From: Magallana gigas
Taxonomy: Eukaryota
DNA length: 64,000 bases
Direction: 5' to 3'
Assembly (NCBI RefSeq): GCF_963853765.1
Contig: NC_088860.1
Span: 30,628,001-30,692,000 of the forward strand
Shown here: positions 6,038 through 44,885 of the stretch, in pieces
Position numbering within the stretch: the first letter of the stretch is position 1
Layout: each line of letters starts with the position of its first letter
Made by a program: the position numbers and the translations under genes
The notes under the pieces: generated by a model
Told to the model about the DNA's origin: nothing
What the model saw: only the letters and a program-made list of their open reading frames with translations
The model's database searches: none

Positions 6038-9000
6038 GTGAGATACAATTTTATCGTACAAAGAGTTAATGGCTTGAGTTTGTGCAATTTAATGAACATT
6101 TAAGCAAATTATATATTTCAAATGTTGCTTTGCAAGTTATGATATATTTTTAGATACGCTTTTTAGTCAAAGAATGTACTTTTTCCCCCTGTTGGTCACC
6201 TTTTTACTGAAGTCGGTCACATTTTCCCATGTCTTTGACACTGAATGGATCTAGATGTCATCTCAAAACATTGATTATAAACTAAATACTATTTTTCTTT
6301 TATGGCAATATATTTTTTTCGCATTCAATACCTTCATCGAATTTAAGTGCAAGAACCAATTTGAAGTGTCTGAAGCTGAAGGATTTATTTGTTAAAGAAT
6401 ATATCTTATCTGTTACTGAATAGTTTAAAAATAAAAGATTTAGAATGTATACCACTTCTTAAACTTCAAGACCAGACGTGATTTGATTAACTGAAAGTCT
6501 GTGATGAATGTAAAATCATAGCAATGATATTTGCAAATGGGTCAAATCACTGCGAGCACAGCTATACTATAATTGTGTCTGGCAGAATGTATGTTTGTTT
6601 GCTTATAATGTGTTAGCCCTTGACAATATTTGCCTTAGTTTCTATTTGCCTAGAGTCTGTTTGTCCGAAATTTAAAGATTTAACAATATTTTTAAATATT
6701 AGATTTTTAAAATGAAAAATGTTTTTCATTGAACATACCTGTCTGATGTCATTGGCAATTACATATGTAAATCGAGAGATAAAAAACAAGATGAAACAAA
6801 AATCCAATAAAAAATTGTCAGATTTTTAAACTTTTGTTACCTATTTTCCAGTACCATGTGGCCTATGTTGCTGGACATAAGTAAGGAAGAATGTAAGCGT
6901 ATATTGCGTAGAATGGAGCTGGAAGCCTATTGCTCCATAGTGTCAGCTTTTAGAGCCCAAGGAGATCTCACAAAGGACAAGAAAAAGATCTTGCAAGATC
7001 TACAAACTACACTCAGGTAAAAAAAACATCAGTAGAATATCTAAGAATCCATAATCAAATGAAACTTAGAAATGTATTACTAATAGATGATAACAAAGAA
7101 ATCAAAAAGTTCTATGAAAATTATTCTTTCTTTGCAGTATTTCCACAGAGAGACATAGAGCAGAGGTTAGAAGAGCTGTCAATGATGAGAAACTGGCAAC
7201 AATTGCAGATCAGTGAGTTAAAAACCTGAATTTTATTTCATGTCATAATGTTCTAGGTCTTGTTGAATACTTTACTTTTGAACTGAAATATTTTTTAGCA
7301 TGTGTGGACCCAGTACAGATGCAGAGTGGATGATCGAGGGAAGGCGGCTTATTCCACTGATGCCGCGTCTTGTTCCGCAAACAGCCTTTACTGTCACAGC
7401 CAATCAGATGGCTAATCTACAGGCAGAGAAAAACGCAGCCATGCCAAGTCCATCTAGAACAGGAAGTAAAGAGAGTAAGCTTTTAAGGCTTCCAAAGACT
7501 TTGTCAACTACCCTTACCTCAACAGTGGCCCTATTTTTAGGGCCTTACATAAAAGAGGCCCTGTAAGAAGCATAAAGTTTCATCTTGATTATTATTTCAA
7601 AGCCCCTCAAGTTCTTTTCCTTGTGTTGCAGCAGGCAGTACTTCCTCCAGTCCACCCACCCCTGTAAGTGGGACTGTCACCAAAGTCACCAGACCATCCA
7701 GTCCTAACTCCAATGTGGTGGTACTACCAAGTGGAATGTCTATACACATCAAAGGTTTGCATTTTATATGTCTTATTATTTATGAAAATAATGAAATTTA
7801 AGGGTTCTCTCCCCTAATTCTACTTTTAGTTTTGATTGAAACTGAAAAATTTCATTGAAGACTGAGATTAGCTGATGCATCAAGAAAATTGCAAAATTTA
7901 TGGTTGGTTACCCACTGATTGTCTGGTATATGCTTACTGTGGTTTCATCAATATTCGTTGAATACCAATTTTCGTGGATTTCGTTGTTTAGTTGATCCAC
8001 GAAATTAAATGTTCATTGAAGTGCAATTTTTATTAACATTTTGTATTGATAGAGTCATTGGCCACGAATTTACGTATTCTTGAAACTGTGATTTTCACTT
8101 TACCCACGAAAATTGTTGCCTTTGAAAATTAATGAAACCACAGTACTTAGTATTTTTAAAACTTGTTAAATCTTGCACTAGTAGTTTTTAAGCATATGGA
8201 GGACCCTACAGTGGGTTCTGAAAAACGAGTTGAACAATGACATAATCTTTTTTAGAGCATCATGTTGTGAGACACTATAACCAGTTTCATTGAATCAGAA
8301 AATCAAAAACTGACAGATATTATGGTTTTCTCTCAAGTTACATCCCAGTTTTTTTCACTGTTTTGATAATGATGAAAATCTTTTCAGGTGGACTAAATAC
8401 TGAAGATGAAGAAGAAATGCCTTCCAGAAAAAGGAGGAGGAGCCAGTCTTCTTCGTCAGACTCCATCAACATCGTGTCCCCATCAGCAGGAACCCAGACC
8501 CCCAGGGTCACCTACTCCACTGCAGCAAGCTCCTCCTCAGGAATGTCCCCTGTCAAAATCACAATCAGCAAGAGTCCCCAGACCCGGCCACAGGTCACTG
8601 CCTCCAGTCAGGCCCAAAAGGTTAGGCACAATAGATTTTGGCACTCTGTAAAGAAGAGCTTGTATAGATAGTTTACAATAGATTCAATTTCAGCCAGAGT
8701 TGTTTACTGTCAGATCCTATGTTGGAAGAAAATAAGCATAGATTCCTTTATTTATTGTTCAACCAAATTTAAGTTGTCATACTAGGCATGTTGATGTAGA
8801 TGACACTTTTTTTCTGAGAAATAAACCTTTGCATACTTTAATAGGTAATTTTAACATTGCAAGTGTTTAAAAATTGTTTAAAAACCAGTTTGATCTGCTA
8901 GATGGTGGCAAAGGGACATAAATCAGAGGGAAATGTGTTATACAAAAACTTATCTATAGCAGATTATTGCAGATGCTTATTCAATTGGTAGCCCATGATC

Positions 9001-12000: not shown

Positions 12001-15000
12001 AAATATTTGTGAGAGAAAGATTAAAATTTAATAATGCATGTTTTTGTGATTAGATATGCTTTTATATAATTTTGTGCATTTCTAGCCCTCTTGCCAAGTT
12101 TAAATAGAAAAAAAAAACTTACTTTGTATTTGTTTTGTGTAAATCATATTCTATCACAAATCACATGTAAATCTTAATACAATTATGTTGTGTCTGAACT
12201 GGATATTTTTTAAATTCTCTAGTACTATGATTTCAGGTGCTTCAAATGAAAACCTCCCAAACAATGAGTGGTTTGAGTATGATGACAATTCATCCTTCCA
12301 GTCGGGGGTTGATCAGTCTGCTGTTCAAGCCTTGATAGAACAACAAGGACCTAGCAAGCCAAAGGTCACAGTTCAAAGGTTAGCAACAAGTTATATGACT
12401 CAGGAGCCTTATGTACATGTACAATATATGAGTAAAAATAAATACAGGCTTAAATGTATATAAGAGAAAGCAAGTTTTATTATGTATTTCATAAGAAATA
12501 ATGTGAAAAATGGTGATGTTTTATACCTTCTTCAAGTATTGGAAAATAAAAATGGCAATAGAAATTTCAATTAATAAAAACCTCAATCACCTGATTATTC
12601 ATATGAAACAATATTTTATTAACATTGGAATCTGGAAGTTATTTTGATGTTTTGTGTTGTAGATCTTCAAGTGTCGACATAGGGCAATTGTCAGACCAAC
12701 TTTCTCAACAACAGTTCTACACAATAGGTATGGCAACAAATAATTTTGTAAATTTTTCATTGTTCAAAAAGAAAATAAACTTATTATGAATGCTGTATAA
12801 TGAGTTCTCCTTATTGTTGTACAGAACAAGCTATGAAGATTCTAAATAACCCGGAACAGAGTGAAGCAATGATGATGGAGGAGGTAAGATGACAGATTAC
12901 TAGTATCTTTCTTGTGCATTTGCCTGTATATGTCTTTAAAGAAATTCATTTTGTAAATGAATTGTTAATTAAATCAATTTTTAGACCATCCTGAAAGAAA
13001 CGCACATGTTACAGTTAGGATTTCAGTTGATTCTTTTACACAGATGTCATTTTCTATTCTTGCGACTTCATGTTGCCCAGAAATTTGTTTTTTAATATTA
13101 ATTATATAAATGTTGAAAATAAGAACATTTATTCAGAATCAGGAATCATCATCAGAAGGAAATGTTGTGATAGAAACAGTGAACACATCTCAAGGTTCCG
13201 AGATCACGTCACAGAACGAATTGGAACAAATAGCCCGTAATTTGAATCTCCAGGGAGAGCTCGACCCACAGACAGGGATATTCTACACCGTGACCAATGC
13301 AGCAGGTCAAACTGAGACTCGCAGACTCACGACCGAGCCCAAAGTAGTGACTGAGAGCAACCCTCAAGGGGAGGCAACCCCTGGCTCTAAGGCTTACGAC
13401 TTGTTAAGTAGCTCGCTGGCTCAGGCTCAGATAGATCTTGATCCATATCAGTTCATCGAGGAAGATGTACATGTGTTAACGGACAAATCTCCAGCTAGCA
13501 GTCAAGCTAGCAGTGGCATTGTGGGTAAGAAACATATGTTAAAAGAAGCCCCAATCATGATATGCTTTAACATTTGCTTCTCAGAGTATGTACTTAAATG
13601 CTCATAAATTACAGTTTGGAAATGCATAAGATATCCTGATAATATGGACCTTTCATACAAGATTCAACTACTGTAGTGCATTCATTGTTGAATTGTATAT
13701 AATCATTCCTTTCCTAGCAGAAACTACTGCTGCGGCAACGTCTGACAATGTTGTGACATCGGAGAGCAGCAGGACAACCACAAGTGGTTCCAATCACACC
13801 ACCACCACCATTAGAATCAAGCCAGGCAGCAGTTTTATACCTATACAGGAGATTGCCAAATCATCCACCATCAATGTCACACAAGAACAGGTACTTGTGT
13901 ACTAATACATAGATTTATTTTGGCAACTAAATGCACACTGCAGTATGGCAGTTTATTTCCTGGATGTTCAATTTGCAGTACATAAATAAATGACAACTAT
14001 TAACAGATTAACATGCAAAAGTTCATCAAATGTGTTCACTGAAAATCTGATATTTAATTGATGGAACATTGCATAAATGTGCATGAAAGTATGCATAATT
14101 ATGTTCCTTATATTTACACATGTAAATTAATCAGAATTTGGTTGATGATGTGTCAGTTAAATGTTCAGAGTTATTGTTTCTGTCATGTTTTGATGATTTT
14201 TACTGGAAAAAAACACACCTTTCAATTAAATACAATTGAGGTCTATGAAAGGGAAAGAATCTTGAGCATCATATGATTTTACCATGAAAAACTCACAGGA
14301 ATGAAAACAAATTTCTGATGGAGATTGTTTACATTTTTTCTCCATTTGAAAAGCTGTGGAACACCTCGCAAAGTTTTTTCAACATTATCATCAGGATGCT
14401 TTCATGTTGATTGCAATACAAAATCCTTTTCGACTTTTAATTTTCAGCTGTGTATTGATATCTGACAAGATAGAAAGAATATTGAAAAAAAAAATTCTTT
14501 GATATCATTCATCATATACATTTGTATAAATTACCTTTATGACTATATATTATATGCACACTGTTCATATGTTTTGACATACTGATGTACATTTGCCCGG
14601 CTGTTACAAGTTCATGTATGTGTATGGACTATTTTTATATGTTGAATCTATTATTTAGGCATTTCTATCTAATATCTGTAATCTTGTATGCCCTCTGGGC
14701 CCAAAATTGGAAATAAACTATTATTATTATTATTATATACATGTACATGTATAAGGAAAACATTTTCTTTTCACACAGAGGAGAAAATGATTAAATCATT
14801 TAAACTGGATTAATTCTAGATATTGGAACCAAATTATTATTTATAACAGAGTAACGTGTTTCATTCTAGCAATGTAAGCTTTATAAAACAATTTTTTTAA
14901 TTAGCTTTATTTAAATTCAAGACCAAGTCCAATAAAATATTAACATACACATGTAAATGTGAAGATTTTCATTTAGGATTTTTAAAAAACACAAACTAAA

Positions 15001-18000
15001 GGATTTATGAATTATTTTTAAGATGTAAGATATAGATAGAGAGTATTTAATAATTTATTTTAGAATTTACAGTATTTAGTAAGTTTTGAATAAGATGTGT
15101 AAAATTATTAATAATTTCTGTGTGATTAAGTTGTCACAATCATGCAAATATAAATTTAATACCAATCATTTTATTATCCAGTGATAATTACTGCAATGAT
15201 TAAGCAATTAACCTACTGATGCACAATCAACAGTTTTAATTGCATATGATGGTGAGAAAGGTAGAGACTATGATACCTGTAATTTACACCTGAGCTGTAA
15301 TAGGTGTAATTAGATGCAGCAAGTAGTAGTGTACCAATGAGTGGAGTCTGTAATTGGGAGGGTGTCAGGAGTAGGAGGAAGGACTCAGTAATTGCTTTGT
15401 GTACTCGGGGCCAGGTATATATATAGCCATCCCTCTGGCTAAGCTCATCACAACTTCTGGCTTCTAGCATCACAGACCTTGTGGAAATATTCAGCTGAAA
15501 GCAAAGATACAAATCCAAATAGTATATTTTTTTAAAAAGATATTTTCTACTTTTAGTGAAAGATCTTTTTGATATATCATTTTTTCCACTTTAGGAAAAA
15601 TAATATTTTTTGTGGTATTATCTGGTTAGTTTTGAAATCAGAGCAAAGATGAATGACGCACTTGTCTACGAGAGGGATTTTGCTGACCACCACAATGTTG
15701 ATGGGGAGATTCACCATGGCCGGCGCTATCCCCAAGTCACAGAGTCCTCTGTCATGCCTGCCCAGGCAGAGTACCCCCCTCCCTACTTTCCCCCACCCTA
15801 CTCCATGTCATCTCAGCCCCCCATGGACTACCACTACAACAACTCCTACGCCCCAATGTCTGACTACCAGCAGCAGGAACAGCCTTCTCAGCAGGAATAC
15901 CAGGCCATGCACAACATTGACAGAATCCATGAGTACAAGATGCAGGATGGTGGATCCAATATACACAGACCAGAGCCATTGATGCCAGGAGCGGTGCCCA
16001 TCAGCTACCCTGACCATGGTATGATGAGCAATGGAGCCCAGCAAGAACTGCCTTCAATGAATGGAAACTACCCACCTATGGAGAATTACATTCCAAGAGA
16101 GATGATTGGAAACTTTGATGCACAGTCCTCCAAAGGCATGATTGTCCACGAGAAGACTGGTCGTAATGATGTGGACATTTCTGCTGCTGCTGCTCCAGCC
16201 GACGTCTTCTGCATGGTGGATGGAAGACTCTCCCTGCTCAGCAGTACCACCAAGTACAAAGTCACCATTGCAGAAATACAGAGAAGATTGTCTCCCCCTG
16301 AGTGCCTGAATGCTTCACTGCTGGGAGGAGTTCTCAGAAGAGCCAAGTCCAAGAATGGAGGAAGATGCTTGAGGGAGAAGTTGGACAAGATTGGACTGAG
16401 TCTTCCTGCTGGAAGAAGGAAGGCTGCCCAGACAACTCTGATGACTTCTTTGGTGGAAGGTGAGGCTGTCCGGCTAGCAAGAGATTACGGATATCTGTGC
16501 GAGTCTGAATTCCCTGCCAGGAAGTGTGCCGAGTACAACTGCAAGAAATATCAGACCCCAGACCCCCAGGAAAGTATGGCACGCAAGAACATGGTGTTGG
16601 CTACCAAGCAAATCCTTAAAGAGTTCATGGATATTCTTAACCAAGACCGCTCTCCCATTGGAAACTCAAGACCCCAGCCAATCCTTGAGCCAGAGATTCA
16701 AGGCCACCTGACCAACTTCAGTCTGATCACCCACGGATTTGGATCCCCAGCCATTGTTGCCTCCCTTGCTGCAGTGCAGACCTACCTTACAGAAGTCTTG
16801 AAGGTCATGGACAAGTCCTTTGTCAACGATGGATCCATGCCTCCCTCCAAGAAGAGGAAGCTGTGAGAAGTTCCCTTTGCCTGTAAATAAAGTGCTCTCC
16901 GTGACTGACTAAAACTTACAAAGTACATGTACTTGACTGGATCTGTAATTCCCTACACATTGTGATGTCATATAACTTACTTTTCCATTGTATGTGTTGA
17001 ATGCCTTGAATTGTTCTATTGGTTTCATAATATGTGCTCATCCTTTTGTATGTTGTATTCATCGACTGTAGTTTTAGAACTAATAAATGCTATGAATATT
17101 TGATTCTCTTCTTTTCGTTTTTCTTTTTCTTTGAAAGGGTTTTCAATTATTGCCAATGCATTATAAAAAAAAAGAATGCATGATAACTGTACCAACTCAA
17201 TGTATTTTGAGTACAAAGGAAATATTCTGGAACTTCTTCATATTCAACTTGTTATTGTTAACTTTCATAGAACAGAAAAATATAGTCTCAAATATTAAAA
17301 ACATTATATGATTAGCAGCCTAAATGGTGAAAAAATAAAGAGTTTTTAATTTGCTTTTTGTAGTTGGCACCCAATGATGTTGTTCAGGAAGAGTTCAGCA
17401 CAGAGACGGTCGAGATGACAGGAACGACGGACTTCCTGTCCCAGCCTGCAGCGCTAACGGAAGAAGTCCAGTTAGTGATGGACTCGGTGGCGCTCGGAGA
17501 CCGAACCATTCAAAGCACCGAGACTGTCACCGTGGAAACCACACAAACGGTGGACCCAGCAGAAGTCAGTCTGGACAACTTTGTTGTGATGGATAACCCT
17601 ATACCAGGTAATTAATTACCCATATACAATGCCAAGTTTTTTTTTTTCGAATTAAGAGTCATATGTAATAAAAACTTTTTGTAATACAGAGAAATAATTT
17701 AACATGTATGTTAAACATAAAAGTAAGAAAGAAACAAATAATTCCATAATTTTATCTTAAAGTATACCTTATTTCTCATCTTTGATGCAGAATGTATGAA
17801 TTACTTGTAATTTTAATTATCTTTTTCCCCCAGGAACCAGTGTCAGTGAAGTTCACAGCATGGATCCCCTCAGCAGTTCTGATCCTACAGGCTTGGCTAA
17901 AATGGGCAAGAGGAAAAGGAAGGTTCCTGCAGCTTTAGAGGATAGCCCAACCCCCATTCCTGGGGGAGGCTGGAGCAGGGCATGCTTAGGGTATGGCTGT

Positions 18001-18940
18001 CCACTTCATTGTTAACTTGGTCCTTTACCTTTTGTGTAGAAGATGCACAAACGTATATCTTTGAATGTATTTATTTAGAATATGCTTATGAGGTTGATTT
18101 TCTTATTATTTTTTTTTGAATGATTACATTGTACATGTGTATGTTTTATTGCAGATTAATTCAGAAAGTGATGAAATACAGAGGTTTAAATAGACACAAA
18201 GATGATTTAAATGCCTCGACATGGTTTCTAGAACCAGGTGGGTAGTAAAGATGATATGTTTAAAAACCAGCAGGTATTTTGTTTTTCTTACAAAGAAATC
18301 ATCCACAGGGTAAATTACTGACAAACATAAATGATGCCTTTTCGTTTTCCCCAATACATGTAATTGCATTTTTGTTTCAATATCCGCCCTCTTTCTTTGT
18401 AGTGGATCCAGAAGATGCGCCTGATTATTACTCCATTATCAAGAATCCCATGGATTTTGGAACCATCAAAAAGAAATTAGAGGTTAGTTGTATGGAATTG
18501 TCATAATATAAGGGATAGATTTATACACTTGCCTTTCATAAGAAGTTACATGTTATTTTTGTTGTAAGTTTGATTTATTCATGTGTCAACAATATTTTCT
18601 ATATATGTAAACAGGGTCTTAGTTACTCGGATTATGAGGATTTCCATTCAGACATGCTGCTAGTAAGAGACAACTGTAGGCTCTATAATCCCCCAGGAAG
18701 TGTGGTGCGGAGAGACTGCGATGAAGTGTTTGCCTATTACATGTCAGAGTATGAGAGAATTCTGGAAAAATGGCAAAAGGTAGGCAAATAATAGGGGGGA
18801 AATAATTTCATAATATTTTATGAAATAAGTTATTGTAAATGTATTTATGGTTAATTGTCATTCATTTTATTTGTCAGGCTCACATCTCTTCACCGTCCTC
18901 CAAGAAATTGAAGTTTGAAAGCAGAAGTCCAAAGACATGA
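6009..18940 (+). CDS. EMSY: EMSY transcriptional repressor (N-terminal ENT domain) with in-frame C-terminal bromodomain; 25 coding exons, ~1197 aa
   Basis: Exons: 6009-6037, 6852-7016, 7138-7212, 7299-7474, 7632-7754, 8388-8620, 9323-9536, 9652-9758, 10034-10172, 10262-10426, 10754-10891, 11011-11120, 11236-11367, 11608-11776, 12237-12378, 12663-12727, 12825-12883, 13137-13524, 13718-13890, 17364-17607, 17834-17990, 18155-18237, 18403-18482, 18615-18779, 18878-18940. All GT-AG, phases match, total 3594 nt. ENT signature [24 protein letters not shown]...[20 protein letters not shown]...[33 protein letters not shown] acceptors at 7632/7635 and 13718/13721. Confidence 0.9.
7935..8145. mobile_element. 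~210-bp TA-flanked MITE (Tc1/mariner-like) in EMSY intron 5
   Basis: Terminal inverted repeats TACTGTGGTTTCAT...ATGAAACCACAGTA; second copy at 19613-19815. Confidence 0.8.
15270..15641 (+). promoter_or_regulatory. Internal promoter, 5'UTR exon and 5'UTR intron of the nested AP-2 gene
   Basis: CCAAT at 15334-15338, TATATATATAG at ~15416-15426 and five GTAAT sites (15279-15395). Probable donor GTATAT at ~15522 and acceptor tttgaaatcag ending at 15641, 7 nt before the ATG. Confidence 0.55.
15649..16866 (+). CDS. TFAP2: Transcription factor AP-2 family protein (405 aa), intronless CDS, nested on the same strand in EMSY intron 19
   Basis: Uninterrupted ORF with PY activation motif PPPYFPPPY and AP-2 basic/helix-span-helix region ([68 protein letters not shown]...[17 protein letters not shown]). 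C-terminal NLS-like [14 protein letters not shown] at 16886-16891. Confidence 0.93.
17975..18779 (+). other. Bromodomain encoded by EMSY exons 21-24
   Basis: Spliced translation [111 protein letters not shown]. It has the canonical F.EPV...APDYY.IIK.PMD..TIKKKL and NC..YN motifs, including the acetyl-lysine-binding Asn. Confidence 0.92.
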
Positions 18941-25952: not shown

Positions 25953-27131
25953 CATATCAATAAGCTCTTTCAGCATCTCGGTATAAAGGCAGCTCTCTTT
26001 CTCTGAGATTTTTACTGCTTGGAGCAAATGTTACAGTCTACTATTCAGAACGTTCCTAATCCTCATTCACTCAATGAAAATGGCAGACTGTGATTGGACA
26101 ATACCTTACTATCTGGGGGCTGCCCAGCTTGAGGTGGGTAATTACAGTCAAATGAGATGGTCTCCGTAAAGAGCAATCCTTTGCGCCATGCTTTACGTTA
26201 ACCGAATCGCCACTTATAAACGGTAACTTGCTCATCTTGGTGATTCCACACTAGTAGGGAGGCCGGAGTGTCCTCTCCAGGTGATCGGATACAAGCCAGG
26301 GTTAAGAATAATGGAGGACAGGGTGTTTCCCATGCAGCAGATCCAGCTCTTCACATCACTAATGGATCAAAAGATGCAGCAGGTTACTAGGTTGGCACCA
26401 GTCCCATCGCAGGAATTGCCATAGAAATGCTTCCAGCAGTGCCGAGTTGTCCTCGGGAATCCATTTCCGGATTTTTACTCAATGTTTACTCCTGAAGTTC
26501 TTTCTAAAGTTCTGCCAAGTTAAGTAGCTTAACCAAACCAGAATGCCAGAAGTCCAGGATATGCTATTATCTCCATTATTGAGAAGGTTTTAAGGTTGTC
26601 AAAGGCAGGGGCGTCTTTAAAAACCTTAAAACCTGCTCAATGTGTAGAAATATTTTAAGGTGGTATTTGACACCTCGATATTGGGGATGGGGCAAGGGGC
26701 TGAGGGAGATAAAGAAAAACGTCTTGGTTATCCATCTAAACTTTTTCAGACAAGGAGCTTCAGACATTCAGCAACTGTATAATGTGACAGGAGGCTAGAT
26801 TTAGGATGTTTCAGACATTTTACCACTATTGGTCACCGCAATCTGAAAAGTCGGGGGGGGGGGGGGGGGGTATTACATAGAAATGAGCCAACTCTTGGAT
26901 ATAACTTGTAAATTTTATATATTTAGCAATTACTATACAAAATTTTCACTTTTAGTAACACCATATTCTAAAGGTATTAGAGATGATCAATAGTTGATGG
27001 ACAGTTGTAATTGAAGAAAGTCTACAAAAAGATGAAGGCTACATTTTGTGATATATAACAACAAAGAATTTCAATTTCCAGTGTATGAATTCAGAGATTC
27101 TACCAAGTACCATTCGATTCATTACAAGATG

Positions 27132-27134
<3 letters not shown>

Positions 27135-27167
<33 letters not shown>

Positions 27168-29758
27168 ACAGCAGTTCCTTGTAACATTACATTTCGTAGC
27201 ATATGCTTTTTCTATTTTATAAACATTGAACCCCTTTCTTGGGACCCAGTTGTGGTCCGAGGTTTATGGTTGGCTTGAACAACATAAATAGTAGCATAGG
27301 AATGAAAACCGCACGTACACAACCTGAAAAACTGAACGTAGAAGAGTTCCACTTCAAGAGGAATAACTCTCAGACTGTACAGAACATCAAGAAAGATAAC
27401 TCTTGGTTCCACTACATTAGAGTTTACACAATATGAGGATCCTTGCATAGTAATCTCACAAACTGTAGCATTATAGTTCTCGAGAAAAACTTTTTATAAA
27501 CATTTTCAATATATCTTTCTATGTTAAACTTTGAACCCCTCTTGGGGCCACAGTATTAGTCCAGTGCTAAAGTTTTAATTATTTGGAATCTACATTATTT
27601 AAGGATGCTTGCATAGTTATCTCACAAGCTGAAGCATTATAGTTCCCTAGAAAAAGATTTTTCAACATTTTCCCTCTATATTTCTATGCTAAACTTTGAA
27701 CACCTCTTGGGGCCCCAGTATTAGATTGAGGTCACGGCTTTTATAATTTCGAATCTACACTATTTGAGGGTGCTTATGTAGTTATCTGACAAATTGATGC
27801 ATTGTAGTTCTCGAAAAGAAGATTTTTAAACATTTTCCATATATACCGGTACTTCTACATTTAACTTTAAACCCATCTTGGGTCCCTAGTATTTGTCCAG
27901 GGGTCACTATTTTAAAACTGTAGAACCTTCATTATCCAAGGTTGTATGCATGATAGTAATCTCACAAATTGAAGCATTGTAGTTCTCGAGAAGAAGATTT
28001 TTTAACATGTTACCTTTATATTTCTATAATAAACTTTGACCCCATCTTGGGGCCCCAGTATTGGTCCCGGGGTCACGATTTTACCAATTAGGAATCTACA
28101 TAAGCGAAGGATGCATGCATAGATATTCCACAAACTAAAACATTGTAGTTCTTGAGAAGAAATTTTTTTAACTTTTCCTGTTTAATGTTTTTTAAAATGT
28201 TTAAATTTTGAACCCCTCTTGGTGCCCATCAATTGTCCGGGAGTTACAATTTTTTTGAATCTACATTATTTAAGGATGTACATGTATGCATAGTAATATC
28301 CCAAACAGTTGCACTATAGTTCTTGAGACGATGATTTAAAAACATTTTCCTATATATGTTAAAATCTAAACCCCTACTGGGGCCCCACTTTTTGTTCGGG
28401 GGTCACGAGTTTTACAATCTTCACTATATATACAACCTTTTGTGTATGTATTGGCATTTTTGGTGAAGTGGTTCTTGAGAAGAACATTTTTTAAACATTT
28501 TTCATATGTAGTTCTATGTAAAACTTTGAACCCCGCCTGGGGCTGCAGTTTTGGTTCGAGGGTCACGATTTCTACAATTTAGAATCTTTATTATACATAC
28601 AAGCTTTTGTGTAAATATTGGCATTTCTGGTGCAGTGGTTCTTGAGAAGAAGACTTTTTAGACCTTTTCCTATGTATTTCTATGTTAAACTTTGAACCCC
28701 GCCTGGGGCCCCAGTTTTGGTCCGAGGGTCACAATTTTTACAATTTAAAATCTTCACTATATATACAAGATTTTGTGTAAATATTGGCATTTCTGGTGCA
28801 GTGGTTCTTGAGAAGAAGATTTTTTAAACATTTTCCTATGTATTTCTATGTTAAACTTTGAACCCCGCCTGGGGCCCCAGTTTTGGTCCGAGGGTCACGA
28901 ATTTTACAATTTAGAATCTTCACTATGTATACAAGCTTTTGTGTAAATATTGGCATTTCTGGTGCAGTGGTTCTTGAGAAGAAGATTTTTTAAACATTTT
29001 CCTATGTATTTCTATGTTAAACTTTGAACCCCGCCTGGGGCCCCAGTTTTGGTCCGAGGGTCACGATTTTTACAATTTAAAATCTTCACTATATATACAA
29101 GCTTTTGTGTAAATATTGGCATTTCTGGTGCAGTGGTTCTTGAGAAGAAGATTTTTTAAACATTTTCCATTGTATTTCTATGTTAAACTTTGAACCCCGC
29201 CTGGGGCCCCAGATTTGGTTCGATGGTCACGATTTTTACAATTTAGAATCTTCACTATATATACAAGCTTTTGTGTAAATATTGGCATTTCTGGTGCAGT
29301 GGTTCTTGAGAAGAAGATTTTTTAAACATTTTCCATTGTATTTCTATGTTAAACTTTGAACCCCGCCTGGGGCCCCAGTTTTAGTCCGAGGGTCACGATT
29401 TTTACAATTTAGAATCTTCACTATATATACAAGCTTTTGTGAAAATATTGGCATTTCTGGTGCAGTGGTTCTTGAGAAGAAGATTTTTAAAGACATGCAC
29501 CCTATACTTACTGTTTTGCAATTATCTCCCTTTTGAAAAGGGCTGTGCCCTTTATTTTAACAATTTATAATTCCCTTTCCATAAGGATGCTTTGTACCAA
29601 ATTTGGTTAAATTTGGCCCAGTGGTTTTTGAGAAGAAGTTGAAAATGTGAAAAGTTTACAGACGGATGGACAGACAGACGGACGGACGGACGGACGGACG
29701 ACGGACAACGGGTGATCAGAAAAGCTCACTTGAACCTTCGGTTCAGGTGAGCTAAAAA
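27135..29758 (+). mobile_element. Non-autonomous Helentron/Helitron-like element carrying a ~166-bp tandem satellite (HindIII/Cg170-like)
   Basis: 5' end ACAAGAGGCCCATGGGCCACATCGCTCACCTG. Central tandem units with AACTTTGAACCCC recurring at ~28688, 28854 and 29020 and AAGCTT sites. (GACG/GACA)n microsatellite at ~29658-29706. 3' palindrome AGCTCACTTGAACC-TTC-GGTTCAGGTGAGCT followed by an A-run. This matches the described architecture of oyster Helentron-borne satellites. Confidence 0.85.
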
Positions 29759-30928
29759 ACCAAAAGGAAATCCAATCTTTTTTTTTTTAATGCATGCAAA
29801 TCATTCATGCTCAAAGTAAAAAATTAAACAATGCAAGCAGCTTTAAAAACAAAATAAGCCTTTGGCCAGCCAATAGAGTAAAATTCATATGCCAATATTA
29901 AATACCAGAATTCAAAACAAAAATTCTAAGCTATATGACATTTTACATTATTCCTAACCCTCCCTTTCCTTTGATAAATGCAACCTTTAGAAAAGTATAA
30001 TATTATAACAAACACATACTATTGGAAATATGATTTTCAGTATTTGATATAGAATATACTATTTCAATTAAGTATTTGATATAAAATATCAAATAATCAG
30101 TGAATTTGAAATACATAGGCCCAAAAAAAGCTCTTTAATTTCCAGTAGATGTCCCATGCATAAGCTTAAGGCAATCAAATATACACTATAGTATAACACA
30201 ATATAGCATATACCTGTACAGGTACAAAACACACTACCAGATTATCAGTATAAAACTAACCCAACAGAGTCCAATCCGCCCCCCCCCCCTCCCACTTTAA
30301 ACCCCCCACTCACCTAATCACCCCCCCCCCCCCCACACACACACCTTATCTTAATCTAAAAGCTGTGAAAAGGTTTAAAAACTTTATGTTGTATAAAATG
30401 CTGTTGTACAAATTACCTGTATTAGTTATCATATCAATGTAATAGCCCTGTAAACTTCATAAAGTTAGAAGACCTAGCACGACCTACATGTAGCTACAGC
30501 TATACATGTATCTCTACAGATTTATTCATAATTTAACTCTCTGCATGTTAACTTTATATTTCTACTGAAGGCTGGCCTAGACTTTTTAACACTATGTATA
30601 ATATAAACTGTCAATATGACATAAATATATCTATCTATTTACAATGTACTGTATATATAATATACATATTACAGTTGTACACAACATAGCTGTCAACATG
30701 ACAGATTTAAATATATTTACATAAGTATATACAATATACATATATAAAAATAAAAAGATTCTGTAGACCAGTCTGCTTTTGTGGTGGTTAATGTGTCAAT
30801 CACACTATTCAAAAAGTCACTATTATTTGTCTCATTGCAGTCAGTAATGGCACTCAGAAGTCTGTTCCACATGAAGAGAGCACTGTGAATTTTCTCACAA
30901 GACAAGTGTTTTTGACAGTCTTTTTCAC

Positions 30929-42022: not shown

Positions 42023-44885
42023 ATGGCACGAAAACATAAAAATGATCACCACCACAATCATCGTGAAACAAAGGCAGTCCAAAGAAAAAGAAATAAATCG
42101 GAAAACGATCCCGACGTAGAGGCTAAGTCAAATGAGCCGGCGATCAAACCAAAACCCCGGCACAAAAAGCCACTCGACCAGTCACAGCAGAGAAAAATGG
42201 CATGGATTATACTGTTTGTATTGGCAGTAATTTTAGGTGCAACTGTCTACATACGCTATCAAATTCATCTTCAGGAGTTGGTGATTACTCCACTTAATGT
42301 TCCTAAAATGATAGCTGAAAACGCGTCATCTGCAAAAGTGACGCCAGAAAAATTCTGGGGAACCTATCGATCAAATCTGTATTTTGGCTTGAAAACACGG
42401 TCTCCAACTTCTCCAGTAGTTGGATTAATGTGGTTAGAACAAGCTAGAACTATGCCTCCCCCAATCCGACACTGGTGTAGTCAAGACGATAGATTAAATC
42501 AATATGGTTGGCTCAAACATGATGGAGTTAACTTTGGCATCCAAGATATTGTAGAGCAAAATTTCAATATTACAACATCGTATGTAAAGAGACAAGGAGG
42601 GGAGCATGGCGGTGATTGGACAGCTCGAATTACAGCAATACCCAAAGTATGAAACATTATGTGTAATTTGTTAGAAAAAATAAATAACGCATCAGCCAGG
42701 TTCTTTAGATTCATTTTAAACATGAGTTGGATGAATATGTATGCACATAAATTGCATACCTCACAGATTTTTAATATCTAGCAAACTTTTCTGTTGAGCA
42801 CCAAATCGCAAGAATACAAAAACATTGAACAAAGAATCATCTGAATGAGTAAAAATATTTTAGATGTTTATTAGCCATGTGTTTATAAAGCTCTCATTTG
42901 TTAATAAATGTCAAAGTACAATAAGTTTTGGTTTAACATTGTCTAAGTTGCTACTGGAATTGATTTGCTAAATTTTCATAATTTTTATTTTTCAGGATGT
43001 CAACAGGCCTGTTATACTGTCTCTCATGTTTTACATGGCATTAGATGGTCAAGGCTCTTTAACACCAAACATTATGAAAAATAGAATGGACTCTATAAAT
43101 GGACAATCACTAGAACTGGGCAACTTCAAGTTGTCATTTCCCAAAGCTAAGGATGGTAAAGGAACAAAATACCACCATCTAATTTCATATGCTTCTAGAC
43201 TTGACAGGCTCAAAGACCTGTTACAGAATTCTCTGCAGACTGACAGCTTTAATAAAGAAAGGACAATTCCATTCTTTGCTTTAGCAGGACGTCTTGTTCC
43301 GAGAGATAGTCCAGATCCAAATTTCATGGTTCATCAAGTCACAGCACAGCTACCATTAGAAATGGAAGTTGTGTTTGAATCAGGTAGCCATAGTGCTCGA
43401 CATGAATCTCTCCAGGGCGATTTATACTCCCACAAACTAGCAAAATTTGCTAAAGATTTCGATAATAAATTTTCTGAAGTATTTGATATTGATAAAAAAG
43501 GTTATAATGCAGCGGAAATTGATTTTGCAAAAGCTGCCCTGAGTAACATGATTGGCAGCATAGGATATTTCTATGGCTCTTCACTTGTGAAGTCAAAGTA
43601 CAACAAAGAACCAATTTATTATTGGCCTGCCCCTTTATACTCAGCAGTCCCTTCCAGATCCTTCTTTCCAAGAGGATTTCTTTGGGATGAAGGTTTTCAC
43701 AATCTTCTGATCAGCCAGTGGGATCCTGAAATATCAAAGGACATTATTGCACACTGGTTAGACTTGCTCAATGCCGAGGGCTGGATCCCTCGAGAACAAA
43801 TTCTGGGAGCAGAGGCCAGGGCCCGAGTTCCTGATGAATTTGTCGTACAAAGAAATGAGAATGCTAATCCCCCTACTTTGTTCTTGCCCCTTCAGCGTTT
43901 GATTAAAGACATGATAACAAGCCTTGATCCAAAAGACAAGCAGTTCTTAACAGCAGTGTTCCCAAGACTGCAGAAATGGTTCAGTTGGTTCAACACAACA
44001 CAAGTGGGAAATGAGCCCCTGACCTACTACTGGAGAGGGAGGGATGAGAAAACAATTAAAGAGTTAAATCCTAAGACTCTGACTTCAGGTCTTGACGATT
44101 ATCCTCGGGCTTCTCATCCAAACTCAAAAGAGAGACATCTGGATTTGAGATGTTGGATGGCGCTGGCATCAGGGATTCTAGCAGACATTGCTAAGACACT
44201 TGAACAGGATTCAAAAGAGTATGAGGCCACGCATCAAGTTCTGACAGACAATACTTTATTAGACAAGTTGCATTGGTCTCCAAAGAAGGAATGCTATTGT
44301 GATTATGGACTTCATTCTAACAGAATCATTTTAAAGAAACCCATGCCTCCCAAAAATATACAACCAGGACAACCATATGACCAAGACAAGATAAGAGATG
44401 TGAAAACAGAACCCAAGATGCAGTTTGTGGAGTCTTTTGGATATGTTTCTTTGTTTCCATTCATGCTGAAGATTGTAGAACCCAACTCTCTAAAACTGTA
44501 TAAAATCTTAAATGATCTCACCAATACAGATTTACTATGGACCAACTATGGACTTCGGTCTTTGGCAAGAAATGCGCCACAGTATCAGAAACGGAACACT
44601 GAGCATGACCCTCCATACTGGAGAGGGGCCATCTGGATCAACATGAACTATCTTACCCTTGGTGCCCTACATCACTACTCCAACACAGCCGGCCCATATC
44701 AGCATCTAGCTCAAGGCATATACAAGGATTTACGTGCAAATATAGTAAATAATATAATTAAGGAATATTATAGAACAGGTTATATTTATGAACAGTACAA
44801 TGATAAAACTGGTGAAGGGAAAGGCAGCCATCCCTTTACTGGGTGGTCGGCTCTGGTTGTACTCATCATGGCAGAAAAATATTAG
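42023..44885 (+). CDS. MOGS: Mannosyl-oligosaccharide glucosidase (ER glucosidase I, GH63), 2 exons, 837 aa
   Basis: Exons 42023-42646 and 42996-44885 join in phase 0. Basic cytosolic N-terminus and TM (MAWIILFVLAVILGATVYI), FWGTYRSNLYFGLKTRSP, VPSRSFFPRGFLWDEGFH, LTSGLDDYPRASHP, YWRGAIWINMNY, IYEQYNDKTGEGKGSHPFTGWSALV. Confidence 0.97.

What the first reader, a model, noticed from the sequence alone, without database searches (positions are those of the whole stretch)
15649..16866. Intact AP-2/TFAP2 with an intronless CDS, nested in sense orientation inside EMSY
Bilaterian TFAP2 genes as I recall them have multi-exon coding regions. Here all 405 codons are contiguous and intact (PY motif, DNA-binding and dimerisation domain, terminal SKKRKL), with visibly C/G-ending codons unlike the host exons. 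This suggests a retrocopy kept under selection that gained its own promoter and a 5'UTR intron. Nested genes are more often antisense to the host, so a same-strand nested transcription factor is unusual.
Basis: partly seen in the sequence, partly recalled or inferred. Interest (0 to 1): 0.75.

Follow-up and report, generated by a model that had tools for sequence, protein, structure and literature searches.

The report
Ancient intronless AP-2 gene inside EMSY
This oyster genome carries an intact, transcribed and strongly conserved extra copy of the AP-2 transcription factor with no introns, sitting inside an intron of an EMSY-like gene; it is an old retrogene-lineage paralogue shared by all oysters examined, not a recent insertion.

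Summary
Window 15649-16866 (+) is an uninterrupted 405-codon AP-2 gene (Pfam TF_AP-2 5.8e-74). It lies in a 3473-nt intron of the genome's only ENT-domain (EMSY-like) gene, on the same strand. Host RNA splices 13888→17362 across it.

The genome has three AP-2 loci:
- a canonical 7-exon gene on C7;
- this copy on C8;
- a second single-exon copy on C3.

The retrocopy idea is only partly right. The window gene belongs to an old intronless lineage. Saccostrea and Ostrea have single-exon orthologues nested in the same host gene. Pinctada has a single-exon copy between a TLD gene and a Kelch gene, the same neighbours as the oyster C3 copy. That makes the C3-type locus look ancestral and the EMSY-nested copy a secondary duplicate that predates the split of the three oyster genera.

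A direct origin from the oyster canonical gene is rejected (AU p=3e-49). dN/dS against Saccostrea is 0.07 (0.03 in the DNA-binding domain). RNA contigs and stranded poly(A) reads cover it, with almost no coverage in the flanking intron. A conserved upstream block carries CCAAT and TATA motifs. The proposed 5'UTR intron was not seen.

Relatives' orthologues are already annotated in RefSeq. I found no paper describing this history. Moderately interesting.

The parts
15649..16866 (+). Single-exon AP-2 coding sequence (405 codons plus TGA). PY motif at 15775-15801. TF_AP-2 DNA-binding/helix-span-helix domain at aa 187-382. Basic tail SKKRKL.
   Evidence: dN/dS 0.076 against Saccostrea
15157..15513 (+). 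Upstream block conserved in three oyster genera (71-78% identity, while the rest of the intron does not align). It holds CCAAT at 15334-15338, TATATATATAG at 15416-15426 and six TAATT motifs. Likely promoter and 5' leader. The exact transcription start was not determined.
   Evidence: RNA contigs start at 15068 (X1) and 15197 (X4)
16867..17100 (+). 3'UTR, with AATAAA at 16886-16891 and 17082-17087. The X4 RNA contigs end at 17096, and coverage in 17137-17333 is 0 in X4.
13889..17361 (+). Host intron that contains the AP-2 gene. It is removed from the host mRNA by a GT..AG splice.
   Evidence: the joint 13888→17362 is present in X1 and X4 (contigs) and in X19 and X20 (one read each)
6895..7213 (+). 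ENT domain exons of the host (EMSY-like) gene. This is the only ENT locus in the genome.
   Evidence: 52.3 and 29.1 bits, cut-off 28.5
13135..13888 (+). Host exons immediately upstream of the AP-2-bearing intron (13135-13523 and 13717-13888).
   Evidence: joints and X4 record 7; conserved with Saccostrea
17362..18777 (+). Host exons downstream (17362-17603, 17830-17989, 18154-18235, 18401-18480, 18613-18777). The last two carry bromodomain matches.

Best explanation
The ORF is a functional paralogue of the AP-2 (TFAP2) transcription factor. It belongs to an old intronless lineage, mRNA-derived in origin, found in pteriomorph bivalves.

Proposed history:
1. A processed mRNA of the canonical 7-exon AP-2 gene was reverse-transcribed and inserted. 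This happened no later than the common ancestor of oysters and pearl oysters, and the copy landed between a TLD-domain gene and a BTB-Kelch gene. That locus survives as the C3 copy.
2. A later duplication of that already intronless gene placed a second copy into an intron of the EMSY-like ENT-domain gene, in the host's orientation. This happened before Magallana/Crassostrea, Saccostrea and Ostrea diverged.
3. That second copy is the window gene. It is transcribed as its own unit from a conserved upstream block with CCAAT and TATA motifs and ends at its own poly(A) signals, while the host mRNA splices over it.

Proposed function: the protein keeps the PY activation motif and a nearly unchanged DNA-binding/helix-span-helix domain. 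It most likely binds GCC-N3-GGC-type sites as a dimer, possibly also pairing with the canonical AP-2, under a regulation different from the parent's.

Shown here: gene structure, paralogue set, nesting, conservation of the nesting, microsynteny, selection and transcription.

Inferred: the retroposition itself, the order of the two duplication steps, the start of transcription, DNA binding and dimerisation.
For: Gene family and structure
- There are three AP-2 loci in the genome: C8 (the window, one ORF), C3 (one ORF, 433 aa) and C7 (multi-exon).
- The C7 gene has 7 coding exons over about 12.9 kb, with junctions at window-protein aa ~231, ~272 and ~320. The Mytilus canonical gene also has 7 exons over 27.7 kb.
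- The window protein aligns colinearly across all of these junctions.

Orthologues and synteny
- Single-exon orthologues are nested on the same strand in the ENT gene in Saccostrea cucullata and Ostrea edulis, and the flanking host exons are colinear.
- The Pinctada copy is single-exon and lies between a TLD gene and a Kelch gene. The own C3 copy and the Ostrea C3-type copy have the same neighbours and orientation.

Phylogeny
- The ostreid and pteriid intronless copies form a clade with 100/99 support, inside the pteriomorph canonical AP-2 group.
- Window-type plus oyster canonical as a clade is rejected (ΔlnL 99.5, AU p=3e-49).

Selection
- dN=0.066, dS=0.87, ω=0.076 against Saccostrea. ω is 0.031 in the DNA-binding half.
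- The three CDS variants listed in the RNA contigs all fall on third codon positions.

Transcription
- RNA contigs span 15197-17096 (X4) and 15068-17371 (X1).
- The stranded poly(A) run X20 gives depth 0.6-4 on the + RNA strand across the CDS, against 0-0.15 in the intron bins 14773-15166.
- The host joint 13888→17362 is present in all four runs.

Regulatory block
- An upstream block is conserved in three genera and carries CCAAT and TATA motifs.
Against: - No poly(A) remnant or target-site duplication supports retroposition at this locus. Only AT-rich chance repeats were found. This is expected for an event this old.
- Because the source copy was probably already intronless, an RNA and a DNA route for the C3-to-C8 step cannot be told apart.
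- The order of branching among the C3-type, the Pinctada-type and the window type is unresolved. The best tree puts the window type with Pinctada (89/80), and a C8+C3 clade is merely not rejected (p=0.34). The duplication could therefore predate the oyster/pearl-oyster split.
- Expression evidence is thin. There were a few dozen reads, none over the CDS in the second poly(A) run (X19), and Logan contigs cannot prove RNA origin.
- RNA contigs begin upstream of the TATA box, so the promoter assignment is uncertain.
Confidence: 0.8

Rival explanations
1. A direct, oyster-specific retrocopy of the canonical multi-exon AP-2 gene on C7, independent of the other intronless copies. This is the simplest reading of the first reader's proposal.
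For: In the DNA-binding domain the window protein is more similar to C7 exons (74-88% identity per exon) than to the C3 copy (61% overall).
Against: - The higher identity reflects the very slow evolution of the canonical gene, which is at least 90% identical across oyster genera.
- Constraining window-type plus oyster canonical into one clade costs 99.5 lnL units (AU p=3e-49).
- The window type shares derived residues with the C3 and Pinctada copies, for example VDGRL in place of the canonical VPGRL, and an MN..(M/V)Y(E/N) start.
Confidence: 0.03
2. A dead or neutrally drifting retrocopy that is merely carried along in a host intron. On this reading the RNA signal is unspliced host pre-mRNA.
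For: It lies on the host's strand, so host pre-mRNA necessarily contains it. Read numbers are low, and one poly(A) run shows none over the CDS.
Against: - Full-length frames are intact in three genera at dS≈0.9, with ω=0.076.
- Only the gene and a ~350-nt upstream block are conserved within the intron.
- In X4 the coverage is confined to 15197-17096, with zero in the flanking intron bins. In X20 the intron bins 14773-15166 are near zero.
Confidence: 0.02
3. A DNA-level duplicate of the canonical gene that lost its six coding introns one by one, with no retroposition involved.
For: No poly(A) tail or target-site duplications are visible.
Against: - It needs six precise and independent intron losses.
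- Every member of the clade examined (three oyster genera with two loci each, and Pinctada) is fully single-exon, with no intermediates.
- The canonical gene keeps all its introns in oysters and Mytilus.
Confidence: 0.05
4. A variant on timing: one retroposition before mussels (Mytilida) and oysters (Ostreida) split. The single-exon Mytilus AP-2, nested in a DEAD/HA2 helicase gene, would then be the same lineage rather than an independent retrocopy.
For: - All 15 intronless rows form one side of a branch in the best tree, with support 70/95.7 and SH-aLRT 97 in the quick tree.
- Mytilid and ostreid/pteriid copies share an 'MN-x-MY(E/N)G..Y' N-terminus that is absent from the three annotated canonical isoforms.
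Against: - Mytilus intronless plus Mytilus canonical as a clade is not rejected (AU p=0.375), and neither is ostreid intronless plus oyster canonical (p=0.38).
- The Mytilus copy keeps canonical-like residues (VPGRL, PLGNT).
- Its locus differs.
- No scallop intronless copy appeared among the named hits.
Confidence: 0.45

Closest known systems
Canonical bilaterian AP-2 / TFAP2 (human TFAP2A structure 8j0k; oyster canonical gene K1P2V7_MAGGI / XP_011423272, here on C7)
   Same: Same domain plan: a PY motif followed by the TF_AP-2 basic/helix-span-helix domain. Alignment to the solved TFAP2A domain is close over 213 residues (E=7.8e-99).
   Different: There are no coding introns, against 7 coding exons in the canonical gene. 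The activation region is shorter and divergent, the N-terminus is different, and the tail is a basic SKKRKL instead of ...KDENRRE. The chromosome is different and the gene is nested in another gene.
Oyster C3-type intronless AP-2 (K1Q9B2_MAGGI; C. angulata XP_052716783; own genome C3:5088797-5089864)
   Same: It is single-exon, belongs to the same intronless clade, and shares derived residues in the DNA-binding domain.
   Different: It is 61% identical overall. It lies between a TLD gene and a BTB-Kelch gene, as in Pinctada and Ostrea, rather than nested. It evolves faster (branch length 0.79 against 0.45).
RefSeq predictions of the orthologues (Saccostrea cucullata 'transcription factor AP-2-alpha-like', 403 aa; Ostrea edulis XP_048746377.2 'AP-2-epsilon-like', 446 aa)
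   Same: 86% and 73% identical respectively. Both are single-exon and nested on the same strand in the ENT-domain gene.
   Different: These are automatic names only. I found no statement of a retrogene origin or of the nesting in the literature searched.
Functional retrogenes of developmental or germline genes, e.g. amphioxus SYCP1 retrogene replacement (PMC5803294)
   Same: A single-exon, mRNA-derived copy of a multi-exon gene that is kept under selection and has acquired regulatory sequence at the new site.
   Different: Here the parent is not replaced. The canonical gene persists and is extremely conserved. The retrogene lineage has itself duplicated.

Membership tests
AP-2 / TFAP2 transcription factors | TF_AP-2 domain (PF03299) above the curated threshold | tested here: met
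   248.7 bits against a 23.4-bit cut-off, covering profile positions 1-196 of 197
AP-2 / TFAP2 transcription factors | Full-length match to the solved DNA-binding and helix-span-helix dimerisation domain | tested here: met
   8j0k_A, E=7.8e-99, query aa 182-394 against chain residues 5-215
AP-2 / TFAP2 transcription factors | PY motif in the N-terminal activation region | tested here: met
   PPPYFPPPY at aa 43-51. The core PYFPPP is invariant in the alignment with paralogues and the canonical gene.
AP-2 / TFAP2 transcription factors | Sequence-specific binding of GCC-N3-GGC-type sites as a dimer | not testable with these tools
   Inferred from domain conservation only (ω=0.031 over the domain)
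Retrogene (mRNA-derived gene copy) | All introns of the parental coding sequence are absent | tested here: met
   One uninterrupted ORF. It is colinear with canonical exons 2-7, whose junctions were mapped.
Retrogene (mRNA-derived gene copy) | An intron-bearing parental gene exists at another locus | tested here: met
   C7:36449220-36462120 (-), 7 coding exons. The same structure is found in Mytilus.
Retrogene (mRNA-derived gene copy) | Poly(A) tract at the 3' end and flanking target-site duplications | tested here: not met
   Only an A9 run at 17165-17173, away from the mapped 3' end, and AT-rich chance repeats. These marks are expected to be erased at this age (dS is saturated against the paralogues), so this neither confirms nor excludes retroposition at this particular locus.
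Functional gene rather than processed pseudogene | Intact orthologous frames and dN/dS well below 1 | tested here: met
   Intact in Saccostrea and Ostrea. ω=0.076 by NG86 and 0.065 by YN00.
Functional gene rather than processed pseudogene | Transcribed as its own unit | tested here: inconclusive
   RNA contigs are confined to 15068/15197-17096/17371, and there are + strand poly(A) reads in X20, but none in X19. Read numbers are low, no 5' or 3' ends were mapped, and no long reads were available.
Nested (intronic) gene, same strand as host | Host mRNA splices across the inner gene; both are on one strand | tested here: met
   The joint 13888→17362 (GT..AG) is present in four runs. Stranded reads of the host and the inner gene have the same orientation.
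EMSY (host gene identity) | N-terminal ENT domain; single such gene in animals | tested here: met
   PF03735 matches only at window 6895-7213 (+) in the whole genome. The orthologous host genes in Saccostrea and Ostrea carry ENT.
EMSY (host gene identity) | Overall architecture as in vertebrate EMSY (ENT domain and no other recognised domain, as I recall it) | tested here: inconclusive
   The host also carries bromodomain matches at 18366-18482 and 18624-18722 (33.8 and 26.1 bits) and in both relatives' products. 'EMSY-like' is the safer name. ENT exons and downstream exons were not seen joined in one RNA record here.

The most novel reading that the evidence does not exclude
AP-2 may have been copied through mRNA several separate times in molluscs, with the survivors mostly being copies that landed inside introns of other genes in the host's orientation.

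The loci seen here:
- oysters, in the EMSY-like gene;
- Mytilus, in a DEAD/HA2 helicase gene;
- Haliotis rufescens, in a Cpn10 gene;
- Ruditapes, in a vinculin-family gene.

That is four of the five compact loci examined. It would suggest that read-through or splicing from the host transcript is the usual route by which a transcription-factor retrocopy is first expressed, before it evolves its own promoter.

The Haliotis and Ruditapes copies begin with the exon1-exon2 sequence of a different mRNA isoform than the oyster and mussel copies, so at least three independent events are likely.
Probability: 0.3. Interest if true: 0.6.

Novelty: new member of a known kind. Interest (0 to 1): 0.45.

Why it matters
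AP-2 is a key ectoderm, neural-crest and germline regulator in vertebrates. In the canonical searches here, most protostomes appeared with one conserved multi-exon gene. Oysters turn out to carry three AP-2 genes. Two of them descend from an old mRNA-derived copy and have been kept under strong constraint for a very long time, with different neighbours and presumably different regulation.

That gives a clean natural case for two questions. How does a dimerising developmental transcription factor diversify after retroposition? How does a gene nested on the same strand coexist with its host for so long?

It also matters for annotation. The automatic names ('alpha-like', 'epsilon-like') wrongly suggest orthology with vertebrate paralogues. 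An early developmental transcriptome of C. angulata listed an 'AP-2 alpha' contig among the most abundant larval transcripts (PMC3428355). Which of the three genes that was remains open.

Tried and rejected
- Retroposition marks. A search for a poly(A) tail or target-site duplications around 14700-17400 gave only AT-rich chance repeats.
- 5'UTR intron. A candidate donor near 15522 and acceptor at 15594 exist in the sequence, but no run shows that joint, and X4 record 8 is colinear across 15197-16073.
- Chimeric transcript. No host-exon-to-AP-2 joint was seen.
- Structured RNA. Rfam found nothing at gathering threshold in 13900-17400.
- Canonical exon 3. My splice-pattern scan failed. The annotated protein later located it at C7:36456150-36456215.
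- dN/dS against the paralogues, Pinctada and Mytilus. dS is saturated (5.3 or undefined), so these comparisons are unusable.
- Resolving single against multiple origin, and the order of the C3-type, Pinctada-type and window-type copies. The AU tests did not discriminate (p=0.34-0.38).
- Two unnamed single-ORF copies from one ENA assembly (P0005 and P0254). The DNA was not retrievable, so their neighbours could not be compared.
- Literature. Four searches (AP-2/TFAP2 with oyster, Crassostrea, bivalve, retrogene, intronless) found nothing on this gene's origin.
- Earlier scan notes. None cover this place. One unrelated note on an intronless MTRR elsewhere in the genome was not used.
- Not attempted.
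Full report
**1. The observation**

The window is G000:C8:30628001-30692000 of a 564-Mb, 29-contig genome. Protein clusters identify it as a Magallana/Crassostrea oyster.

The ORF listing finds one open frame at 15610-16866 (+). From the ATG at 15649 it encodes 405 residues and a TGA stop.
- Pfam TF_AP-2 covers aa 187-382 at E=5.8e-74.
- The solved human TFAP2A DNA-binding/dimerisation domain aligns to aa 182-394 at E=7.8e-99.
- The PY motif (PPPYFPPPY, nt 15775-15801) and the SKKRKL tail are present.

The ORF is real, intact and unmistakably AP-2.

**2. Nesting**

The Pfam ENT domain matches only one place in the whole genome, window 6895-7213 on the + strand. Host exons conserved with Saccostrea flank the AP-2 ORF on both sides.

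Laying two RNA contig sets and two poly(A) raw-read runs on 13000-18900 shows a GT..AG joint from 13888 to 17362 in all four. The AP-2 gene therefore lies in a 3473-nt host intron on the host's strand.

The host also has bromodomain matches in its downstream exons, at 18366-18482 and 18624-18722. The orthologous Saccostrea and Ostrea products show the same combination. 'EMSY-like ENT-domain gene' is therefore the safer name.

**3. Paralogues and gene structures**

Both the protein and the Pfam profile find exactly three AP-2 loci.

| Locus | Structure |
|---|---|
| C8 (window) | one ORF, 405 aa |
| C3:5088797-5089864 (-) | one ORF, 433 aa |
| C7:36449220-36462120 (-) | 7 coding exons |

The exon junctions of the C7 gene were read from the sequence. 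It is 100% identical to a Logan-assembled protein (P0007) whose ≥90%-identity cluster holds the annotated 'AP-2-epsilon' isoforms X1-X3 of C. gigas and C. angulata. The Mytilus canonical gene has the same 7-exon plan over 27.7 kb.

The window protein is colinear with canonical exons 2-7 and shows no trace of the junctions.

**4. Relatives elsewhere**

A database search, cluster look-ups and contig look-ups gave the following.

| Species and copy | Structure | Location |
|---|---|---|
| Saccostrea cucullata, window type (403 aa, 86% id) | single exon | nested, same strand, in the ENT gene |
| Ostrea edulis, window type (446 aa, 73% id) | single exon | nested, same strand, in the ENT gene |
| Ostrea edulis, C3 type | single exon | between a TLD gene (+) and a BTB-Kelch gene (-) |
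| Pinctada imbricata | single exon | same neighbours and orientation |
| Own genome, C3 | single exon | same neighbours and orientation, by tBLASTN |
| Mytilus trossulus | single exon | nested, same strand, in a DEAD/HA2 helicase gene |

Mytilus also keeps a canonical gene.

**5. Phylogeny**

A careful IQ-TREE analysis used 43 proteins under LG+C20+F+G4.
- All bivalve canonical genes sit together.
- Inside Pteriomorphia there is a clade of ostreid plus pteriid intronless copies (100/99). It contains the window type (100/100), the C3 type (100/100) and the Pinctada group.
- There is a separate mytilid intronless clade (100/100).
- The positions of these clades relative to the oyster and Mytilus canonical genes are unresolved.

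AU tests:

| Constraint | Result |
|---|---|
| window type + oyster canonical as one clade | rejected, ΔlnL 99.5, p=3e-49 |
| window type + C3 type | not rejected, p=0.34 |
| Mytilus intronless + Mytilus canonical | not rejected, p=0.375 |
| ostreid/pteriid intronless + oyster canonical | not rejected, p=0.38 |

All intronless rows form one clade in the best tree, but with weak support (70/95.7).

A shared 'MN..(M/V)Y(E/N)' N-terminus unites the mytilid and the ostreid/pteriid copies. It is absent from the three annotated canonical isoforms. This is suggestive of one origin but not conclusive.

**6. Selection and composition**

Against the Saccostrea orthologue, dN=0.066, dS=0.87 and ω=0.076. 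ω is 0.127 for the N-terminal half and 0.031 for the DNA-binding half. Comparisons with the paralogues are saturated.

The three CDS differences listed in the RNA contigs all fall on third codon positions.

| Sequence | GC3 |
|---|---|
| window CDS | 0.58 |
| Saccostrea orthologue | 0.56 |
| C3 copy | 0.48 |
| canonical C7 gene | 0.47-0.55 |
| neighbouring host exons | 0.48 |

**7. Transcription and regulatory sequence**

- In X4, an RNA-seq library, contigs cover 15197-17096. The flanking intron bins (14773-15166 and 17137-17333) have zero depth.
- X1 contigs cover 15068-17371.
- The stranded poly(A) run X20 gives depth 0.6-4 over the CDS in the same orientation as the host. Depth is near zero in 14773-15166.
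- X19 shows none over the CDS.
- No joint other than the host's lies in the interval, so the proposed 5'UTR intron and any host-AP-2 chimera are unsupported.

Within the intron, only 15157/15175-16905 aligns with Saccostrea and Ostrea. The upstream part, 15157-15513, is 71-78% identical. It contains CCAAT (15334-15338), TATATATATAG (15416-15426) and six TAATT motifs.

Six upstream ATGs lie at 15219-15337 and none between 15338 and the start codon. This fits a productive start downstream of the TATA box. But contigs reach further upstream, so the start site is undetermined.

AATAAA signals lie at 16886 and 17082. The X4 contigs end at 17096.

**8. Interpretation**

The loss of all six coding introns, in a clade nested among 7-exon genes and at loci unlinked to the parent, is best explained by retroposition of a processed mRNA.

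That event is old, dating at the latest to the common ancestor of Ostreidae and Pteriidae. It is most simply placed at the TLD-Kelch locus, which both families share. The EMSY-nested gene is then a secondary copy of an already intronless gene, fixed before the three oyster genera diverged. The mode of that step, RNA or DNA, cannot be recovered, and no poly(A) or target-site marks remain.

The gene is functional by every sequence criterion available. It probably acts as a dimeric GCC-N3-GGC-binding factor with its own regulation.

**9. Wider pattern (a lead, not a result)**

- Haliotis rufescens has a single-exon AP-2 inside a Cpn10 gene.
- Ruditapes philippinarum has a two-exon AP-2 inside a vinculin-family gene.
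- Both are on the host's strand. Both begin with the exon1-exon2 sequence of the X1 isoform, unlike the oyster and mussel copies.

That suggests repeated retroposition of AP-2 in molluscs and a possible excess of sense-nested survivors. I did not test this against a genome-wide expectation.

**10. Novelty**

The orthologues are already predicted in RefSeq under automatic names. Four literature searches found no description of their retrogene origin, their history or the conserved nesting.

One 2012 transcriptome paper lists an 'AP-2 alpha' contig among abundant larval transcripts of C. angulata, without saying which gene it was (PMC3428355).

This is a well-supported new example of a known phenomenon, a long-lived functional retrogene lineage and a same-strand nested gene. 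It is of moderate interest.

Noticed in passing
window 14517-14737: A ~220-nt dispersed repeat (SINE/MITE-like) in the host intron upstream of AP-2. At least 40 scored copies at 86-100% identity lie on all chromosomes. RNA word depth is very high on both strands, with many different flanking sequences. It is absent from the Saccostrea and Ostrea intron alignments, so it is a young insertion.
   Followed up: partly
window 18366-18482 and 18624-18722: The ENT-domain host gene also encodes bromodomain segments (33.8 and 26.1 bits). The Saccostrea and Ostrea orthologues are likewise listed with ENT plus Bromodomain. As far as I recall, vertebrate EMSY has no bromodomain, so this may be a lineage-specific architecture or a fused gene model.
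   Followed up: partly
L018:3001-4260 (Haliotis rufescens); L021:3001-4788 (Ruditapes philippinarum); L014:10001-11245 (Mytilus trossulus): These are further compact AP-2 copies nested on the same strand inside unrelated host genes: Cpn10, a vinculin-family gene and a DEAD/HA2 helicase. The Haliotis copy is single-exon. The Ruditapes copy has one intron near the 3' end. Both derive from an X1-type mRNA.
   Followed up: partly
window 13523→13717 / 13720: The host exon uses two acceptors 3 nt apart (NAGNAG-type alternative splicing). Both are supported by several reads in X20 and by contigs.
   Followed up: no
window 19000-42000 (repeats at about 27100-29760, - strand): Between the host gene's last mapped exons and the downstream GH63 glucosidase gene (42080-44882), the window has about 23 kb that Saccostrea lacks. 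It includes a tandem array of ~166-nt units. Their translated sequence resembles repeated units inside the Saccostrea host intron (L012 5658-7250).
   Followed up: no
ENA assembly ERZ26168041 (proteins P0005 and P0254): One unnamed assembly carries two different single-ORF AP-2 genes of the Pinctada-like group. This suggests further duplication of the intronless lineage in another pteriomorph. The DNA was not retrievable.
   Followed up: partly
window 17602→17833 in run X19: Three reads show a non-canonical joint (AC..CA) with four extra letters (TCCT), beside the canonical 17603→17830 host splice. It could be a sequence variant at the exon end, a second allele or an artefact.
   Followed up: no
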